Below are positions 13,909 to 63,935 of a stretch of 64,000 bases of DNA, one piece after another. Origin of the DNA: Bispira polyomma (taxonomy: Eukaryota); contig OZ287748.1 in NCBI GenBank assembly GCA_965649765.1, forward strand, positions 52,266,001 through 52,330,000. Reading direction: 5' to 3'. How positions within the stretch are numbered: the first letter of the stretch is position 1; every line of letters begins with the position of its first letter. The notes under the pieces are model-generated. The model saw only the letters and a program-made list of their open reading frames with translations, did no database searches and was not told the origin of the DNA. Both the position numbers and the translations under genes were made by a program.

Positions 13909-15130
13909 TAATTACAGCTGTACAGAAATTTTTACTACTCTTCGCCTTCATGTTACTACGCCTCTAATCATGGTAAAATTACTGTATATCATGCTTTGTC
14001 AGGTTTATCCTTTAAATATTGATATATATTAATGTATGTATGCGGCCTATGTACATAATTGATGAACATAATGTTTCTTTCATCCATGATGAGTATATGC
14101 TCTTCACTTATAAATATTTCCTCTCTTAATACAGGTGATTTTAAAGCATTCTTGCATTATTTAGGGGTTATAATCAAATTCTGCCCAAGCAGTAAAATTT
14201 GTCAAAGATGTCATCTAATTTATATGTATTAAATTCAGCCAAAAATGACGTTGTTAGTAAGTGGAGTGTGTGGTGGATAGCATTGAAAGCTAAGACATAT
14301 AGCTTGTTAATGTCAAGGGGAACTGAATACAGTGTGGTTTTATATAGAGTATGATGACGGTAATTATGTTAGACAGGGACTGTGTACTCTTACACTCAGC
14401 TCCATCCTCTTAAAGTGACTACAACATACATCAAGTAAAGGCTGAATTAGTGCCAAGTACATCTAATGTTACATTGTTATTGTACTATAACAATCTCTAT
14501 AAAATAAAGGCTAAATCCTGTTATCTTAGTGCCAAGTACATCTAATAGTATTGTAATGAACCTAAGCACCATTTGAATGGGACAGAACTTAAGTTGTAGA
14601 ATTATTGCCACAATAGTGCAGTCCCGACAGAGTGTTTGTGGTGATTACATTTTGTATGTTTCGAGTGTGTTAATTATAAATGCCAGGGTCATATTATGGC
14701 AAACCTTTGTGAAAATCAAGATTCGGGGGTTTTTTTTCAATTTGATGAAATATGTCCTTAATTTAGATATCATTGGAAAGACATTGGACTTCCACAATGG
14801 ACTCAATTTGGAAATAAGTAGGCAATGGGCGAATTTCTTTGTTGCATTTTATATTATTACTGAAGGATTTATAAAGCGTCAACTGCAGACTAAAAGTCCT
14901 CTGAGGTGCTGAGTCTCCCAAATGGGGAAGTCCAGTAACCATGACAAGGGTCCTACCAAGAGAAGCATCCGGTCAGAAAAACAGTCTATGGAGGACGATA
15001 GGTTGGTCGAAAGAGAAAGATTATAAATTTACTTCTTAAGTTCATGCGATTTATCAGATTCGAGAGGCCGCATTTCAAGCTTAGTTTTGAGTGGAAGGTA
15101 AAGACATTGTTTGGTCCCATGAGTTAGATA

Positions 15131-15388
15131 GCTAGATCTTACCAGAGTGGAAAGGTATGTGTTGGTTCTAAATCTCACCAGAGTGAAGAGGTATGTTGTT
15201 GGTTCTAAATCTTAACAGAGTGGAAAGGTATGTGGTTGGTTCTAAATCTTAATAAAGTGAAGAGGTGTGTGGTTGGTTCTAGATCTCACAAGAGTGAAAA
15301 GGTATGTGGTTGGTTCTAGATCTCACCACAGTGGAGAGGTGTGTGTTTGTTTCGAGATTTCACAACAGTGGAGGGGTATGTGGTAGGT
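15131..15388. repeat. Diverged 37-bp minisatellite (TCTARATCTYACCAGAGTGRAGAGGTATGTGGTTGGT)n, about 7 copies
   Basis: TCTA unit starts at 15204, 15241, 15278, 15315. Confidence 0.92.
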
Positions 15389-51880: not shown

Positions 51881-52617
51881 GTATGAGTTTACTTTTATCA
51901 TAACGTGTAACTGTTGCGAGCAGTTGAACCATTTTAGTCCCTGTCTGCAGTCTATGCAGAGATGAATTTTGCTCCTAATATGATCTTTTATTCAAATTTT
52001 CCGTGTAATATGGGAATCTTGTTAAAGTAGAGGTATTTCTTTTACTGTTTGAGATTTGACTTAAACTAGTTCAGCTGTAATTGATTGTCCTAATTAATTA
52101 AAAACAATCCAATCTTCCCTAAATAACCTTTCACTATAATACACCTACACAAGAGAATTACTCTATAGAATTGCTTTTTGTTTTGTGTTATTTTGTTCCC
52201 TTTTTCTCCTACACTATGCTTACTTTGTAGAACTCGATGAACTGGCCAGAACTCTTTCTGCCAATATTGTAGAGGTTTCTGTAAGTGTGGGCCATGTTTG
52301 TCACAGGACTTAAGATAACAAAACCAGTGTCATATTTTCAGACCGTCTGAGAGTCTTTGTAAGTGATAGTGTTTACAGAAAACTAATCAAGTGAGAATAC
52401 AAAGGCGGACCATAGCTTTGTCCGATCACTTTGATCAAGAGCAAATACTGAACGGTTTCCCCTTATTACTTATACATACATGCCGTGGAGATATTTGTCT
52501 TCAAATAATTTTCACATTTACATGTATATCAAATATTTTGAGGAGTTTTTTGTGACATTTGATGTGTTTAGTGCAATATAAGTGTGAGAAATGTGTTTTT
52601 CAGACAGTGTTGGTATC

Positions 52618-55116
52618 ATGGGCTGGAGTTTGAGCTGGCTGGCTTACCTGGGGTTTATAGCCTGGCTAGAGTTGACTGTATCTGAATCCACTCCCCCACT
52701 CACACTCACTTACAGCATCACAGAGGAAGTCACACCTGGAACAATGATTGCAAATATCATGCACGATGCTGGCATTCAACAAAAGTTTACAGTGGACGTT
52801 CTCAACGAAATTCGCTTCAGGTTTTTGTCACAACCACCAATTGATTTTGATCTAGAAATGACCACGGGGAGTTTGTTTACATCTAGTCGGTTCAACAGAG
52901 AAGAGTTTTGCCCTGCTGAGGAGTCTTGTGTTGTGAAACTTGATATAGCCTTACAGCCTGTGCAGTTCTTTCAAATTATCAAAGTGGAAATAGTGGTGGA
53001 AGACCTGAATGATAATGTGCCTGAATTCTATCCAAGAAGTGTGTCCCATCAGCTTATAGAATCTGTATCACCAGGGGCTGCTATCACTCTTCCAACAGCA
53101 GTGGATTTAGACAGTCCTGCATTTAGCATTGTGAACTATGAACTTGTGGATATTAGTGACTCGTTTGGACTAGAAGTGATTAAAAATTTGGATAATTCTA
53201 TCGAAGTGAAGCTTATATTACAAAAGGCACTGGATAGAGAGGTTCAGCAGCAATATCACCTCCAGTTGGTGGCTGAAGATGGTGGGGGTCTAACAGGAAC
53301 TGCAGATATAGCTGTACAAGTACTGGATGCTAATGACAACAACCCAGTCTTCTCAAATCTTACCTATGAAATAAGTATGCTGGAAAATATAGCCTTGGAC
53401 ACCTCAATCCTACAGGTGCATGCAGTTGACCATGATGAAGGAGAAAATAGAGAGGTCAGGTACAGTTTTACTGAACGAACATCCCAGAAAGTGGGTAGTA
53501 TGTTTAGTATTGATGAGGTGATGGGGGATATAAGAGTTATTGGTAACATAGACCATGAAGAGCAAGGAGTAATTCACCTAGGAGTTATTGCCAGAGACAT
53601 GGGGCAAGGTACACTGCCAGCTGAAACCATGGTAGTGGTACATGTGTTAGATGTTAATGATAACCCACCCCAGATAACTGTGAATACCCTCACCACTTCA
53701 GTGAATGCTGCTGTATCAGAGGAAGCTCCAGTCGGTACATTTGTAGCTCACGTTATAGTTGAGGATAAGGATAGTGGGACCAATGCAAACTTTGACTGTC
53801 ACCTCGTGCATAATAAATTGGGTCTGATGAAAATTTATGCCAATGAATATCAGGTTGTAACAAAGGACGTACTTGACAGGGAATCCTCCTCATACTACGA
53901 CATAACAGTTACATGTGTTGATCATGGCGTTCCAAATTTAGAAAGTTCAAAAAGTGTGAGGGTACTTGTTAATGACTTTAATGACAACCCACCTCAATTC
54001 AGTTCAACCAGTTATCATGCTTCTGTGCTTGAGAATGCTTCTCCAGGACTTGTGGTGATCCACATCAATGCAACAGATGATGATATTGGCAGAAACAGTG
54101 AAATTGAGTATAGTTTGCCATACACAGATTCGCATTTATTCACCATTGATTCAGTTAGTGGACAAGTGAAAACCACTTTTAGTTTTGACAGAGAACAGTA
54201 TGATCAAGTTGAGTTCCATGTTATTGCCACAGACAAGGGAACGCCAGCCCTTTCTGATTCAGTTTTAATTCAACTAAACATTTTAGATGTAAATGATGAG
54301 GATCCAGAATTTATCCAAAAAGGATATTCTTTTGGGGTCCTTGAAAATGAGTATCCCAACATAGAAGTGGGCCAGGTGGCAGCTATTGACAAAGACAGCT
54401 TTCCTAATAATGAGTTCTATTTTTCATTTTTTCCTTTTAACTCGGATATCGACAGGACAGAGACATTCAGAATTGATTCACAGTCTGGAGTTATAACGAC
54501 AATGATAACCCTAGACAGAGAAGCCAAAGCTTCCTATGATTTTATTATCTCTGCCATAGATCAAGGGACACCACCTCGCAGTAGCACCACCAGCGTCACT
54601 GTGTATGTAGCAGACAAAAACGACAACAAACCTTCTGTCCAGTTCCCAACTCCATTTAACAACACTGTTAAAATCCCAGTAAATGCTCATAAAGGTTATG
54701 TTGTCACTAGACTGATGGCTAGTGATAATGATTTGGGCGAGAATTCTAGACTGAGTTACAAAATCTTAAATGATAGCTACAACAGTTTATTTTTGATTGA
54801 TCCAAATTATGGAGTCGTCACACTAACAGAGAATGTGAGTAAAAGCAAATCGAGATTCTTTAGTTTCCTGATCATGATTTCTGACAGTGGAACACCCAGA
54901 CAGAGTGTAAGAACTACTTTAAACATTTATGTGGACACGGCCATGCTCCTCCCTGAAGTAATCACAAAGCATGAGGACACGGCAGAAAGTAGCTTCCTGG
55001 AGAGTAACAATTTCATCATTGTGCTGGCTCTGGCAATAGCCTCTGCAGTAGTTACCATTATTTTAGTGCTGGCTATTATTTTGATACACAGACACAATCG
55101 GATAAAGAAAGAAAAG
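52618..55116 (+). CDS. Protocadherin (delta/non-clustered-like), large first coding exon: signal peptide, 7 cadherin repeats, TM helix
   Basis: Acceptor TGTTTTTCAG| at 52603; ATG 52618 begins hydrophobic signal peptide MGWSLSWLAYLGFIAWLELTVS; EC1 C-X5-C (CPAEESC); six DxND(N/E) linkers plus a seventh EC; LDRE and AxDxG motifs; TM FIIVLALAIASAVVTIILVLAIILI; phase-0 donor AAG|GTGGGT. Confidence 0.96.
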
Positions 55117-55440
55117 GTGGGTGTTTCTGTTGTAGGCCCCTTAAGAATTGAAAAAAAAGGTGTTTGGTATTGTCATGGTGTGGCTCTATAATTTGTTGTT
55201 TCAATATAAATAAAATGTATTTGTATCTATCAAATATAAACTTAGTTCTTTTAGATTCATGTAATCTTGACTGAGGCCTTTTCTGACTAGTTGTCAAATA
55301 CTTTATCTCATGTACTCAAGGATCATCAATTTTTAAATCTACTGCTTGCAGACACATCTGGTATGTGGAGGTACATATATATTATACATGAACCCACAAA
55401 TGATTGATTTGATGTTGGAATCTTACCACAGTTAAGATAA

Positions 55441-57720: not shown

Positions 57721-59350
57721 TTGTATCCACCACCGAAGTAATCTTCGGTGGATACTATGGATTAGTTATTGTTACGCTGCTGACGCCGCCGCGTCAGTGT
57801 GTGTAGAGATTTTACCGTTACCGCTCTCCTGGAAAAACTTTTATACCTAGGCTCCTGAAATTTACAGGAAATGTTCTTCATTACAAAACTTGCCTGGGAA
57901 TAACTTTGGCCTCATTTTGACAAACAAGATGGCCGCCACAGGGATTTCTTTGAAAATAATCAGGCTTTTAACTGTGTCTATTTCTCAGCTGTAGAAGGTT
58001 GAATCTCTTTACGGATGATATGTTTAATGGATATAAATGTCCTTTATAAGCATGCAGACATTTGACCTTGAATCTCCTCATTCAAGATCATCAACAGAGT
58101 GCCAAAGTACCCCAACTGACCGATTTTGGCCAAACTTTCTCTAGGGCCTATATCTCGCTTAATATTGGTCCTAGAGGTTTGGGATCTCAAACAAACCTTT
58201 AGGAAATCATGGGCTGGAAATCTTTTCATGGGGTCCGATTTGACCTTGGGCCCCTCGTTCAAGGTCAAATGCGGATAGATAAACTTAAACATGCCTATAT
58301 CTCGCTTAATATTGGTCCTAGAGGGTTGGGTTCTGAAATAAAACTATAGGAAATCATGGGCTGGGAATCTTTTTATGTGGTCCAATTTGACCTTGAGCCC
58401 CTCGTTCAAAGTCAAATGAGGATGGCCAAACTTTAAAGTACCTATATCTTGCTTAATATTGGCACTACAGGTTTTGGATGTGAAACCAAGCTATAGGAAA
58501 TCATGGGTTGGGAATCTTTTTATGTGGTCCGATTTGACCTTTGGCCCCTTGTTCAAGGTCAAATGCGGATGGTCAAACTTAAAAGTCCCTATGTCTCACT
58601 TATTATTGGTCCCAGAGGTTTGGAGTGCAAAACCAATCTATAGAAAATCATGGGCTGGGAATCTTTACATGTACTCTGATTTGACCTTGGGCCCCTCGTT
58701 CAAGGTCAAATGCAGATGGCTAAACTTTAAAGTGTCTATATTTCGCTTATTATTGGTCGTACAGGTTTCAAATGTGAAACCAATCTGTATGAAATCAAGG
58801 CCTGGGAATCTTTTGATGTGGTCCGATTTGACCTTTGGCCCCTAGTTCAAGGTCAGTCTTGGTCAAACTTAAAAGTGCCTATATCTCGCTTATTATTGGT
58901 TGTACAGGTTTGGGATGTGAAACCAACCTATACCAATCTGTATGAAATGAAGGCCTGGGAATCTTTTGATGTGGTCCGATTTGACCTTTGGCCCCTAGTT
59001 CAAGGTCAGTCTTGGTCAAACTTAAAAGTGCCTATATCTCGCTTATTATTGGTTGTACAGGTTTGGGATGTGAAACCAACCTATAGGAAAACATGGGCTG
59101 CTAATCTTTTGCTGTGGTCATATTTGACCTTGGATCCCTCGTGCAAGGTCAAACGGGTAGGCCAAACTTTAAAGTGCCTATCTCCCACATGTTTGCAATG
59201 TGAAACCCACTTGTGTGATTTAAGGATTTAGCATAAATGCCCTATAGGAAACCGTAGGCTCCTAGCTTGGGTGCTAGCTAGGGTGTTTTCAGGGTGTCTT
59301 TCAGCTGGATACAAATATGCATCGGTTCTCCGATGCACTAGGTCTAGTTT
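57721..59350 (+). mobile_element. Complete Helentron-associated non-autonomous element (HINE/DINE-1-like) carrying a ~147-bp tandem array
   Basis: 5' subTIR TTGTATCCA plus hairpin CCACCGAAG-TAAT-CTTCGGTGG and inverted GGATAC; short microsatellite-like tract; 3' subTIR TGGATACAA (59306-59314), hairpin TGCATCGG-TTCT-CCGATGCA, terminal CTAGTTT. Confidence 0.88.
58130..59190. repeat. ~147-bp tandem repeat, about 7 copies, inside the Helentron-type element
   Basis: (G)CCTATATCTC unit marks at 58146, 58293, 58440, 58587, 58734, 58877, 59030, 59176. Confidence 0.95.
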
Positions 59351-60096: not shown

Positions 60097-60363
60097 AAAT
60101 ATGGTCGCTACAATTGTCGCAAAGAAGCACTACGGATCTTTCCAAACATGAGCCAGGCATCTGATGAACGCACTCTCACATTCAGTGGTAATGCAAGTAC
60201 ATTGGGGGATGCGAGCATGTTGAAACAGAAAAAAGAAGTGAGTTTCTGTCTGGATGGCAGTGACTCCACCAATGACTGTAACATGTCAGAAGTGGTGCGA
60301 GGTGCAAAGAGGCCCGAGTCTCGACAAAGTCTACCTTCAACCATTGACCAGCAGGTTCTGCAG
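60097..60363 (+). CDS. Protocadherin cytoplasmic exon (89 codons, KYGRYNCRKEALRIF...DQQVLQ)
   Basis: Acceptor CTTTTTTTCTAG|, phase 0 matches the 55116 donor, open frame, YNCR juxtamembrane motif typical of protocadherins, donor CAG|GTTTGT. Confidence 0.88.
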
Positions 60364-60978: not shown

Positions 60979-61796
60979 TGACCACAAGTGTAAAGATATT
61001 TTGGAGCCTATGACCTCGTAAATATTAAAATCAGGTTTTATTAGAACTTGTTGTTTAAAAAGTCTTAATCCTTGAAGTTCTTTTACAGTATATCAGAACA
61101 CAAAGAAAACGGTTTCAGGGTTATTGAATTGTTTGATGGTCTTTCTTTGATATGTATTCTAGTTGTTTCTATATTCTCTTTTGGGTTTAGTATTACTCTG
61201 ATGAGCTTCTAAACCTGAACACCATTCATAGAAGACCCCATTTTACATTAAAGGGTAAATAACATGTTTTCTGCTAAAAGCTCAAATTACCTCTTGGTAT
61301 GAAATCAACTTCTCAATTGGAAATATCAGAAGTAAAAATGATTGATGGTAATGAGCCTTATCTTTGTATGGTTGAATAGAAACTGTGAAGTTGTTAATAG
61401 ACCTATTATTTTGGTGTGTGACAATGTATGATCGGATAACTTGTACACAACTGTTTGTGTGCGTTAACCAGTAAGTTCAATCAGAACTCAGAGAGTAGAT
61501 TACAACTGTAGAACTTTTAGTTATTGTTATAAAATGTTAGCTAATGTACAGTGTCATCAGCCTTAATTATTATTGCAGTATAAAAATTGTTTAACACATT
61601 CTATTACAGTACATTACATGTACCGGTACTTTATTTTTGGTTTAGTCATGTAATTATAAAAGCTTATAGCAAAGAGGGAAAAAACATTATTTAAAATAGT
61701 CTTGTCAGAAAATGTGCTATTTACTAAAATTAAAGAAAGTTTTGAAGTGATTATGCTGTATTATGAAATGTTATTTAAATATATTAGGTAACATAA

Positions 61797-62712
61797 TTAA
61801 GCATTCCTTAAAAAGGGTGCTTAATTTGTTTTCACCCCTAATTTCCTTGCCGTCGTTGCATGGTCTTTCTTAAATATCTCCTATACATGTAATAATATCT
61901 GGATCAAAATTATTTTGCTAGTTATCTAAACCAGCAGTAGAAACATTTTTTCATATACTTGGATTTGAAGTTTGATCTGCTCTAAAGGTCACACGACACT
62001 GGATCTAAAAGTGCTTGTTATTGGATTTTCTCAACATATTTCTCATAGCTCAACAAAATTTGACATAAACATTGCTGAGAGAAATGTCCGGACTCGACAC
62101 GCTGTTTCAACCACATTTTTTACCGACAATGCATATTGTGCCAAGTATCTGGCTATTTTTCAAAATGTTCAGATTTTGGTGGCCATCTAGAAATTCTACG
62201 TCTTTCTCCAAACATTGGAGATATATCAATTTTGAGCTGATTTGAGACCTACAGGACATATTTTGCAAAACACATCGCAACTTTTCAAAAAAAATTTGAT
62301 TGTGGGGCTATCTTTAATTTTCAGTTCATTTTCAACCCACAGAGCACAATGACTTGAGTATATGGCAACTTTTCAAAAATTAAAAAAAATATTGTCTTCC
62401 TCTAAACGTTGGAGATAGAGCGATATTGAGCTCATGTTCGACCAACATGCATTGTCATGCAATAGTGTGCTTATTATATGGCAACTTTTGACAAATTTTC
62501 CGATCTTGTTTGTTTTCATGTCTAGTTTGCTTGCCACCACTGACGCCGCATGGTTGTCTCTTTAATATCTCCTTTAATATTATTTTAATTAAAATTATTT
62601 TGGTAGTTATCTTAACCAACAGTGGGAAAAATTTTCATAATTGTCATGAATTCAAACTTTAATTTAACTTCAGGGACGCTTCGTTTTTGTTTTCAAAAAA
62701 CGTTTTTTTGTT
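61797..62712 (+). mobile_element. Second, diverged Helentron-type non-autonomous element
   Basis: 5' inverted pair TTAAGCATTCC...GGGTGCTTAA; 3' subTIR-like GGGACGCTT then hairpin CGTTTTTG...AAAAAACG and T-run; internal duplication 61850-61955 / 62545-62640. Confidence 0.6.
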
Positions 62713-62839: not shown

Positions 62840-63813
62840 TCAGTACCCCAGGTACACAGCTTACATTAATATGTATTGTATCAGTACCCCAGGTACACAG
62901 CTTACATTGCTATGTATTGTATCAGTACCCCCAGGTACACAGCTTACATTACTATGTATTGTATCAGTACCCCAGGTACACAGCTAACATTACTATGTAT
63001 TGTATCAATACCCCAAGTACACAGCTTGCATTACTATGTATTTTATCAGTACCCCAGGTACACAGCTTACATTACTATGTATTGTATCAGTACCCCAGGT
63101 ACACAGCTTACATTGCTATGTATTGTATCAGTACCCCAGGTACACAGCTAACATTACTATGTATTGTATCAGTACCCCAGGTAGACAGCTTACATTGCTA
63201 TGTATTGTATCAGTACCCCAGGTACACAGCTAACATTACTATGTATTGTATCAGTACCCCAGGTACACAGCTTACATGGCCATGTATTGTATCAGTACCC
63301 CAGGTACACAGCTTACATTGTTATGTATTGTATCAGTACCCCCAGACACACAGCTTACATTACTATGTATTGTATCAGTGCCCCAGGTACACAGCTTACA
63401 TTGCTATGTATTGTATCAGTACCCCCAGGTACACAGCTTACATTGCTATTTATTGTATCAGTACCCAAGGCACACAGCTTACATTGGTATGTATTGTATC
63501 AGTACCCCCAGGCACACAGCTTACATTGCTATGTATTGTATCAGTACCCCCAGGTACACAGCTTACATTGTTATGTATTGTATCAGTACCCAAGGCACAC
63601 AGCTTTCATTACTGTGAATTGTATCAGTACCCAAGGCACAGTGCTTACATTGCTATGTATTGTATCAGTACCGCCAGACACACAACTTACATTACTTTGT
63701 ATTGTAGCAGTACCCTCAGGCACACAGCTTACATTGTTATGTATTGTGTCAGTACCCCCAGACACACAGCTTACATTACTATATATTGTATCAGTACCCC
63801 CAGGCACACAGCT
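62840..63813. repeat. 41/42-bp minisatellite (GGTACACAGCTTACATTACTATGTATTGTATCAGTACCCC[C]A)n, about 23 copies
   Basis: Direct inspection; C4/C5 length variants. Confidence 0.98.
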
Positions 63814-63935
63814 CTTCCCTCAGTGTACAAGTAACAAGCACCACCTCCTTGGCAGCATGTCAACAACAAACGGCCCTGGCCACCAGCACAGTCTTGGGAG
63901 TAATACATGAACACGAAGAACACAGACAGTTAGAG
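63795..63935 (+). CDS. Candidate further protocadherin cytoplasmic exon (YPQAHSSSLSVQVTSTTSLAACQQQTALATSTVLGVIHEHEEHRQLE)
   Basis: Open phase 0-0 frame ending at donor GAG|GTACGT (63935/63936); in-frame acceptors ATCAG| (63794) and CCCAG| (63803) lie inside the last minisatellite unit; no homology evidence. Confidence 0.5.

What the first reader, a model, noticed from the sequence alone, without database searches (positions are those of the whole stretch)
62840..63935. Intronic minisatellite that looks like a tandemly amplified 3' splice site of a protocadherin exon
Seen: the 41/42-bp array runs directly into a GC-richer open frame ending at a good donor (GAG|GTACGT). The only acceptors phase-compatible with the 60363 donor (63794, 63803) lie inside repeat units. 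Each unit carries a branch-point-like CTTAC/CTAAC, a T-rich stretch and, in most units, two CAG trinucleotides. The last units are 42 bp: acceptors at 63752 and 63710 would add 14 or 28 in-frame residues (YPQTHSLHYYILYQ, YPQAHSLHCYVLCQ), while the next unit upstream has an in-frame TAG. Inference: the intron/exon junction itself was amplified about 23-fold. This would give a ladder of alternative acceptors that could vary tail length or produce truncated/NMD isoforms, with VNTR alleles altering the ladder. That would be a route to protocadherin diversity distinct from clustered variable exons.
Basis: partly seen in the sequence, partly recalled or inferred. Interest (0 to 1): 0.8.

Follow-up and report, generated by a model that had tools for sequence, protein, structure and literature searches.

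The report
Splice-junction minisatellite in annelid protocadherin
A 41/42-base repeat array in an annelid protocadherin gene is made of about 23 copies of the true intron-exon junction of a conserved exon, a type of repeat known from amphioxus as a "mirage"; nothing here shows that the extra copies are used to make protein variants.

Summary
A 41/42-bp array (62840-63813, 23.5 copies) runs 10 nt into a real coding exon of a five-exon protocadherin gene.

A related annelid has the same exon (41 of 43 residues identical). 21 of 23 differing codons are synonymous, three of them upstream of the AG at 63823. That strong-looking non-repeat acceptor therefore lies inside coding sequence. The true acceptor is 63803 and/or 63794, in the last repeat unit.

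The relative carries about 31 nt of the unit once, across the same junction, with no array beside it.

The proposed function, a ladder of acceptors that diversifies the protein, has no support:
- RNA data could not be reached.
- The same gene has a second junction array (49 bp x 14.8 on the exon 4 donor) whose extra copies would all give premature stops.
- The relative has a third array, on the exon 4 acceptor.
- Earlier notes of this scan report many such arrays in this genome.
- In the published precedents (amphioxus "mirages", human F7 IVS7 VNTR) the extra sites are silent.

Verdict: a new member of a known kind, useful as a natural test case for how 3' splice sites are chosen.

The parts
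52591..55116 (+). Exon 1 of the protocadherin gene: signal peptide, cadherin repeats and transmembrane segment. The donor AAG|GTGGGT is phase 0.
   Evidence: Pfam gives six Cadherin stretches (E 1.6e-98) plus Cadherin_2. It is 77% identical to P0001 of a related annelid and about 41% to Platynereis Pcd11x.
60097..60363 (+). Exon 2 (89 codons, phase 0 to 0). It encodes ...YNCRKEAL...KKEVSF...STIDQQVLQ and ends at the donor CAG|GTTTGT.
   Evidence: It is 89% identical at protein level to L005:15488-15754, and the DNA match stops at the donor. Many annelid homologs have an intron at the same position after STID..TL(E/Q).
62840..63813 (+). Junction minisatellite of 23 full units and one 23-nt unit. 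Each unit is the last 31-32 nt of intron 2 (with two AGs) plus the first 10 nt of exon 3 (GCACACAGCT).
   Evidence: TRF; unit table. Mean pairwise identity is 0.90 overall, 0.94 in units 1-12 and 0.88 in units 13-23. The unit is unique in the genome.
63791..63813 (+). The last unit, TCAGTACCCCCAG|GCACACAGCT, which is the authentic junction copy. It holds the two in-frame AGs at 63793-63794 and 63802-63803, 9 nt apart.
   Evidence: It aligns to the relative's single-copy junction GTAGTACCCGCAG|GCACACAGCT at L025:243-265, and both AGs are conserved.
63804..63935 (+). Exon 3 (44 codons, or 47 if it starts at 63795; phase 0 to 0). It encodes AHSSSLSVQV...EHEEHRQLE and ends at the donor GAG|GTACGT.
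   Evidence: The relative's L025:256-384 has 41 of 43 residues identical. 21 codon differences are synonymous and 2 are not; 21 of 23 base differences are at third codon positions. The exon joins in phase to exon 4 at L009:7565, and the junction ...HRQLE|VERLMEML resembles Platynereis QRELEVHQLLQML.
63822..63823 (+). The AG of CTCTTCCCTCAG. It lies inside coding sequence and is not the acceptor. Used with the phase-0 donor, it would give a 28-residue tail ending at TGA 63908-63910.
   Evidence: Codons 4-6 of exon 3 (63813-63821) differ from the relative only synonymously: TCT/TCC, TCC/TCT, CTC/CTG.
63705..63707 (+). In-frame TAG that limits any productive upstream acceptor to the last two and a half units.

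Best explanation
This is a 'mirage'-type junction minisatellite. A segment of about 42 bp spanning the 3' splice site of exon 3 of a delta-protocadherin-like gene was duplicated in tandem. The segment holds the last ~32 nt of intron 2, with two AGs 9 nt apart, plus the first 10 nt of the exon. Slippage or unequal exchange then expanded it to 23.5 copies, mostly through a derived 41-bp variant that fills the half of the array away from the exon. The copy next to the exon is the authentic acceptor (63803 and/or 63794), because only it is followed by the rest of the exon and by its donor 132 nt downstream. The 22-23 upstream copies are near-identical decoy modules, each with a branch-point-like site, a pyrimidine tract and AGs. 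They are most likely silent or used only at trace level. Sites in the last two and a half units would add 14-32 in-frame residues; sites further upstream would give a premature stop. Shown here: the array, the unit spanning the junction, the exon being real and under purifying selection, the position of the acceptor, the near-single-copy state in a relative, and other junction arrays in the same gene and its ortholog. Inferred: the way the array expanded and the silence of the decoys.
For: Array and units. Exon 3 is conserved with 21 synonymous against 2 non-synonymous codon changes, including synonymous changes upstream of the 63823 AG. Phase logic and the seven open in-frame AGs. The relative's junction carries about 31 nt of the unit once (local score 22, reached by 0 of 2000 shuffles), and TRF finds no array in the 255 nt visible upstream. 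Units are 88-94% alike, whereas about half of the third codon positions differ between the species and the introns do not align, so the expansion or homogenisation is much younger than the species split. A second junction array in the same gene (49 bp x 14.8, L009:7671-8394) has a first unit made of the last 45 nt of exon 4 plus GTAA, and the relative is single-copy there. A third array in the relative (94 bp x 10.3, L025:9047-10011) spans the exon 4 acceptor and is single-copy in this genome. Rough enrichment estimate: about 0.16 junction-spanning arrays are expected from the unit sizes of all arrays with at least 5 copies listed, and 3 are observed (Poisson P about 6e-4; about 0.01 without the index case; my own arithmetic). 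Precedents with normal splicing: PMC3087553, PMC3902484, PMC1557585. Earlier notes of this scan list many junction arrays in this genome (unchecked leads).
Against: No transcript evidence of any kind was obtained, so the silence of the decoys rests on analogy. Decoy copies such as unit 17 are identical to the authentic site from -13 to +10, so sequence alone cannot rank them. The three units next to the exon are all 42 nt (14 codons) and keep the frame open, which could reflect selection for in-frame use, although 42 nt is also the likely ancestral unit length. Only one outgroup was available, with 255 nt of its intron. It carries a second, diverged unit-like stretch at L025:149-180 (score 17, 0 of 2000 shuffles), so collapse of an older array in the relative is not excluded.
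Confidence: 0.72

Rival explanations
1. One reading: the amplified acceptors are really used, giving a ladder of cytoplasmic-tail lengths (+3, +14/17, +28/31/32 residues) and NMD-targeted isoforms. Array-length alleles would change the ladder, making it a selected way to diversify or tune this protocadherin.
For: Seven in-frame AGs are open to the donor. The three units nearest the exon are all 42 nt. The -10 AG and the TACCC(C/G)CAG between the two AGs are conserved in the relative, and the one difference is synonymous in the exon frame. The decoys have the same immediate context as the authentic site.
Against: There are no transcript data. The inserted peptides (for example YPQTHSLHYYILYQ) are simply translated intron and repeat sequence. 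The same gene's exon 4 donor array can only give premature stops. The ortholog lacks this array and has a different one. Junction arrays are reported in many unrelated genes of this genome. Published cases of such arrays splice normally.
Confidence: 0.12
2. Recursive-splicing array. 14 of the 23 units read CAG|GT (the acceptor AG directly followed by GTACAC/GTAGAC). An upstream decoy could be spliced to exon 2 and recreate a 5' splice site that is spliced again, so that use of the decoys leaves no trace in the mRNA.
For: The AG|GT configuration is found in units 1-4, 6-12, 14, 15 and 18. Exon 2 ends in CAG.
Against: GTACAC is a weak donor, lacking the consensus A at +4 and G at +5. The intron is only 3.4 kb, whereas known recursive sites serve very long introns (general knowledge). 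The ancestral-type units next to the exon read AG|GC or AG|AC, so the GT is a derived variant that spread within the array. There are no RNA data.
Confidence: 0.05
3. An ordinary intronic minisatellite that merely abuts the exon, with the real acceptor at the non-repeat CTCTTCCCTCAG (63823) and the repeat playing no part in the junction.
For: The site at 63823 has the best pyrimidine tract of the candidates (11 of 15).
Against: It is out of frame with the phase-0 donor and would end the protein at TGA 63908, removing the conserved exons 4 and 5. The codons upstream of 63823 show purely synonymous change against the relative.
Confidence: 0.03

Closest known systems
'Mirage' minisatellites of amphioxus (Adh3, troponin C, globins BflGb6 and BflGb9, PGBD5), as described in PMC3087553 and PMC3902484
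   Same: Both are tandem, minisatellite-sized duplications whose unit spans an intron-exon boundary and carries the splice signal. BflGb6 duplicates the 3' end of an intron plus the 5' part of the exon, exactly as here. Arrays occur at both 5' and 3' boundaries and in several genes per genome. The edge units are less homogenised than the inner ones.
   Different: The host is an annelid rather than a cephalochordate. The copy number here (23.5) is higher than the 3-6 reported for BflGb6, and the unit is shorter (41/42 bp against 150-160 bp, though within the 10-72 bp of Adh3). Normal splicing and length instability were shown for the amphioxus cases and could not be tested here.
Human F7 intron 7 37-bp VNTR, whose first element spans the exon 7 donor (PMC1557585)
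   Same: The authentic splice site is one end copy of an array of identical pseudo-sites. It serves as a natural model for how the spliceosome chooses among identical sites. The exon 4 donor array of this same gene (L009:7671-8394) is the direct counterpart.
   Different: The F7 array duplicates a 5' splice site and lies downstream of the exon. The array studied here duplicates a 3' splice site, with branch-point-like and pyrimidine elements, and lies upstream of the exon. The F7 pseudo-sites were shown by experiment to be functional but silent; here this is only inferred.
Short-distance tandem acceptors
   Same: Two in-frame AGs 9 nt apart (63794 and 63803) are conserved in both species. They could give isoforms with or without the three residues YPQ.
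   Different: The spacing is 9 nt, not 3. Use of either site is unknown.
Vertebrate clustered protocadherins (variable first exons spliced to constant exons; general knowledge)
   Same: Both have a large first exon encoding the ectodomain and transmembrane segment, followed by small cytoplasmic exons.
   Different: The 64-kb window holds a single large cadherin exon. No paralogous copy of exon 2 or exon 3 exists in the genome. There is no evidence for promoter-choice diversity. The closest named relative is the non-clustered Platynereis Pcd11x.

Membership tests
Mirage-type junction minisatellite | Head-to-tail array with a minisatellite-sized unit | tested here: met
   Period 41, 23.5 copies, 89% matches; units listed.
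Mirage-type junction minisatellite | The unit spans a true exon-intron boundary and includes the splice signal | tested here: met
   The exon is validated by 21 synonymous against 2 non-synonymous changes relative to the ortholog. The array ends 10 nt inside the exon. The unit aligns across the relative's junction.
Mirage-type junction minisatellite | The end copy is the authentic junction, continuous with the rest of the exon | tested here: met
   The last unit, 63791-63813, runs into 63814-63935. Coding constraint begins at or before 63813, and only 63794 or 63803 (or upstream copies) fit the phase.
Mirage-type junction minisatellite | Regular splicing is not disturbed (shown by RT-PCR in amphioxus) | not testable with these tools
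No spliced protein containing exon 3 exists in the libraries searched.
Mirage-type junction minisatellite | Length instability or polymorphism | not tested
   Only one copy of the locus is present in the assembly, and no read data were available.
Mirage-type junction minisatellite | Recurrence at other boundaries or genes of the same genome | tested here: met
   The exon 4 donor array in this gene and the exon 4 acceptor array in the ortholog. Many further cases appear in earlier notes and were not checked by me.
Protocadherin (non-clustered, delta-like, Pcd11x-like) | Several extracellular cadherin repeats, one transmembrane segment and a cytoplasmic tail without the classical catenin-binding domain | tested here: met
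   Six Cadherin stretches plus Cadherin_2 and a hydrophobic segment before HRHNRIKKEK. The tail exons match the Platynereis Pcd11x tail, with E 3.8e-06 for exon 4 and 3.2e-07 for the end of exon 5. No other Pfam family was found in exons 2 and 3.
Protocadherin (non-clustered, delta-like, Pcd11x-like) | Full-length gene model is comparable to a cDNA-derived relative | tested here: met
   Five exons in compatible phases give 1242 codons to the stop at ext 89113-89115, against 1241 residues in Platynereis Pcd11x. The exons were joined only inside a script, to check phase and length; no search used a joined model.
   No RNA data could be reached.

The most novel reading that the evidence does not exclude
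Junction-seeded minisatellites are a genome-wide feature of this annelid lineage, as in amphioxus, and arise through a process tied to splice junctions themselves, such as repair or template switching involving partly spliced transcripts. In this gene the array of 23 near-identical 3' splice-site modules would be partly used, giving tail-length isoforms or recursive intermediates whose proportions depend on array length.
Probability: 0.12. Interest if true: 0.8.

Novelty: new member of a known kind. Interest (0 to 1): 0.42.

Why it matters
This locus is a clean, outgroup-supported example of a 3' splice site amplified about 23-fold directly in front of the exon it serves. It is the mirror image of the human F7 array that was used to work out how 5' splice sites are chosen. 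It could therefore serve as a natural or minigene model for choosing among identical branch-point, pyrimidine-tract and AG modules. Two further junction arrays in this gene and its ortholog, together with the many unchecked notes from this genome, suggest that amphioxus "mirages" are not a cephalochordate oddity. They raise the open question of why minisatellites form at exon-intron boundaries. The locus does not, on present evidence, reveal a new way of diversifying protocadherins.

Tried and rejected
- Spliced proteins containing exon 3. An exhaustive HMMER search with the 44 residues gave only two weak, low-complexity hits. A search with the last exon found only the relative's genomic ORF and one distant 273-residue fragment covering the last exon alone.
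- Paralogs as extra outgroups. Exons 2 and 3 match only themselves in the genome.
- Transposon origin of the unit. The unit is unique to this locus. The only dispersed repeat nearby ends about 180 nt before the array. The 5' flank of the array shows no significant unit-like sequence (705 of 2000 shuffles).
- Exon 3 in the first ortholog locus. It is absent from L005, within 6.8 kb after exon 2, and was found only after fetching L025 through the exon 4 ORF. About 7.4 kb of the relative's intron between L005 and L025 was never seen.
- The reading with the acceptor at 63823 and a terminal exon ending at TGA 63908 was my own first guess. The synonymous-change pattern rejected it.
- Pfam on exons 2 and 3 gave nothing. 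Rfam on the downstream loci gave nothing.
- No search was made with a joined (spliced) protein model. Exons were searched one at a time by reference.

Full report

Yes. Tandem Repeats Finder reports one array at 62840-63813 with period 41, 23.5 copies and 89% matches. Cutting it at the recurring TCAGTACC motif gives 23 full units and a final 23-nt unit, TCAGTACCCCCAGGCACACAGCT. Fifteen units are 41 nt and eight are 42 nt.

- 21 of 23 units contain CTTAC or CTAAC, and 22 of 23 contain at least two CAG.
- The array runs straight into a stretch with GC 0.51. The array itself has GC 0.41 and the next kilobase 0.29. The stretch ends at GAG|GTACGT after 63935.
- The unit is not a dispersed element. 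A DNA search and a 28-nt pattern search with up to 3 mismatches over the 1.03-Gb assembly hit only this array.
- A dispersed repeat of about 135 nt lies at about 62505-62640 and ends about 180 nt before the array.

**2. What gene is this?**

The ORF at 52591-55191 has six Pfam Cadherin stretches plus an N-terminal Cadherin_2 domain. Its best database relatives are annelid protocadherins, including Platynereis Pcd11x at about 41% identity. One unnamed protein, P0001, from an ENA assembly of a related annelid, is 77% identical.

I fetched 70 kb downstream of the window and two loci of the relative (L005, L025). These give a five-exon model. Coordinates past 64000 continue the window numbering ("ext").

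| Exon | Coordinates | Locus reference | Boundary and phase |
|---|---|---|---|
| 1 | 52591-55116 | window | donor AAG\|GTGGGT, phase 0 |
| 2 | 60097-60363 | window | phase 0 to 0 |
| 3 | 63804 (or 63795)-63935 | window | phase 0 to 0 |
| 4 | ext 81565-81715 | L009:7565-7715 | ends in phase 1 |
| 5 | ext 88463-89115 | L007:4463-5115 | starts in phase 1 |

- Exon 2 is 89% identical at protein level in the relative, and the DNA similarity stops exactly at the donor.
- Exons 4 and 5 match the Platynereis Pcd11x tail...GRGPSEEG... and ...SYVVDPQALCNEIDALFF.
- The phases fit, and the model gives 1242 codons against 1241 residues for Platynereis Pcd11x.
- The exons were joined only inside a script, to check phase and length. 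No search used a joined model.

**3. Is the open frame after the array an exon, and where does it start?**

The relative has the same exon at L025:256-384, with 41 of 43 aligned residues identical and one codon missing. Of the 23 codons that differ, 21 are synonymous, and 21 of 23 base differences are at third positions. In the other frame the two species are only 43% identical.

Codons 4-6 (63813-63821; TCT TCC CTC against TCC TCT CTG) differ only synonymously, and they lie upstream of the AG at 63823. That attractive non-repeat acceptor, CTCTTCCCTCAG, is therefore inside coding sequence. Used with the phase-0 donor of exon 2, it would also end the protein at TGA 63908-63910, before the conserved exons 4 and 5.

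The acceptor must be an in-frame AG at or upstream of 63803. Candidates are 63803 (CCCCCAG|GCA), 63794 (TATCAG|TAC) or copies further upstream. Both of the first two lie in the last repeat unit, and both are conserved in the relative (GTAG|TACCCGCAG|GCA). I could not decide between them; use of both would give isoforms with or without YPQ.

Seven AGs are in frame and open to 63935, and the in-frame TAG at 63705-63707 closes it.

**4. Was the junction itself amplified?**

The relative's junction reads ...GCATTGTATTGTAGTACCCGCAG|GCACACAGCTCC.... This aligns with 31 nt of the 42-nt unit ending at 63813 (local score 22, reached by 0 of 2000 shuffles). TRF finds no tandem array in the 255 nt of intron visible upstream. 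The unit is thus the last 31-32 nt of the intron plus the first 10 nt of the exon, and a relative carries it essentially once at the homologous place.

- Units are 88-94% identical to each other.
- About half of the third codon positions differ between the species, and their introns do not align.
- The expansion, or at least the homogenisation, is therefore far younger than the species split.
- Units near the exon are the 42-nt CCCCCAG-GCACAC/ACACAC type, like the relative's junction. The more homogeneous 41-nt CCCCAG-GTACAC type fills units 1-12. This fits growth mainly at the end away from the exon.

Caveats: there is only one outgroup and only 255 nt of its intron. It has a second, diverged unit-like stretch at L025:149-180 (score 17, 0 of 2000 shuffles). 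An older two-copy state, or a collapsed array in the relative, cannot be excluded.

**5. This is not special to this junction.**

- Exon 4 of the same gene is followed by a 49-bp array of 14.8 copies with 94% matches (L009:7671-8394). Its first unit is the last 45 nt of exon 4 plus GTAA, so the donor CAAG|GTAA recurs in 13 further units.
- Reading exon 4 through into the next unit meets a stop (…FSQGKSTPHF*). Those copies cannot give productive mRNA.
- The relative is single-copy at that donor. Instead it has a 94-bp array of 10.3 copies (L025:9047-10011) whose unit is the exon 4 acceptor plus the first ~23 nt of exon 4. That site is single-copy in this genome.
- Taking all arrays with at least 5 copies in the two gene regions, a seed unit placed at random would span one of the eight internal boundaries about 0.16 times. 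Three are seen (Poisson P about 6e-4, or about 0.01 leaving out the index case; my own rough arithmetic).
- Earlier notes of this scan list many "junction minisatellites" or "decoy donor" arrays in other genes of this genome, and one follow-up calls them mirages. I treat these as unchecked leads that agree with what I found independently.

**6. Comparison with what is known.**

- Ebner et al. [quoted passage not shown] Both kinds of boundary are affected, and RT-PCR shows that regular splicing is not disturbed.
- PMC3902484 says the same for amphioxus Adh, TnC and PGBD5.
- In human F7, a 37-bp VNTR whose first element spans the exon 7 donor provides identical pseudo-donors. These are functional but normally silent (PMC1557585).

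The present array meets the structural criteria of a mirage: a tandem array, a unit spanning a validated junction, and an end copy that is the authentic site. Splicing behaviour and length instability could not be tested.

**7. How it most likely works.**

The exon-proximal copy is the working acceptor. It alone is followed by the exon body and by a donor 132 nt away, which matters under the exon-definition model of splice-site recognition (established knowledge). The upstream copies are decoys.

- Decoys within the last two and a half units would add 14-32 in-frame residues. Decoys further upstream would give premature stops.
- By analogy with amphioxus and F7, they are probably silent or rare. 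This step is inferred, not shown.
- So does a recursive-splicing reading of the 14 units that read CAG|GT (about 0.05).

**8. What could not be done.**

There is therefore no RNA or read evidence. No spliced protein containing exon 3 exists in the protein libraries. About 7.4 kb of the relative's intron between L005 and L025 was not seen.

**9. Verdict.**

The structural inference, that the junction was amplified, is supported. The functional inference, protocadherin diversity, is not supported. This is a new, well-documented member of a known but obscure class of repeat, found in a new phylum. It has value as a model for 3' splice-site choice and as one data point in what appears to be a genome-wide pattern.

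Noticed in passing
L009:7671-8394 (window numbering continued: 81671-82394, outside the window): A second junction minisatellite in the same gene: 49 bp x 14.8 copies, 94% matches. The first unit is the last 45 nt of exon 4 plus GTAA, so 13 further CAAG|GTAA decoy donors follow the authentic one. Reading through meets a stop in the next unit.
   Followed up: partly
L025:9047-10011 (related annelid, ENA ERZ22147071 ctg30628l): In the ortholog, a 94-bp x 10.3-copy array (94% matches) amplifies the exon 4 acceptor plus the first ~23 nt of exon 4. The same site is single-copy in this genome.
   Followed up: partly
L009:6169-6374 and L007:1841-2149 (ext 80169-80374 and 85841-86149): Two intronic blocks are conserved with the relative (76% and 74% over 200-320 nt; L025:6874-7079 and 15038-15355) although the introns otherwise do not align. 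All frames carry stops and there is no Rfam match. They may be regulatory or splicing elements.
   Followed up: partly
window 62505-62640: A dispersed repeat of about 135 nt. The first look found 1693 candidates in the genome, and the copies scored were 73-84% identical. It looks SINE- or MITE-like and ends about 180 nt before the array.
   Followed up: no
window 61183-61568 and L005:20081-20472: A stretch 80% identical to the relative's intron 2, in the opposite orientation, next to a 648-residue ORF (L005:21184 onward) with a cysteine-rich N-terminus. It is probably a shared transposable element.
   Followed up: no
window 58146-59181, and ext 71161-71876, 74546-75254, 84935-85248, 87404-88218: The introns of this gene are unusually rich in minisatellites (147 bp x 7, 31 bp x 24, 62 bp x 11, 24 bp x 13, 108 bp x 7.5). 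I did not check whether any of them derive from exon ends.
   Followed up: no
L025:149-180: The relative has a second, diverged copy of the unit (ACTTTATTATATTGTGTACTTCAGTACTCCCA) about 75-105 nt upstream of its exon 3 acceptor. This hints at an old duplication of the junction before the array expanded.
   Followed up: partly
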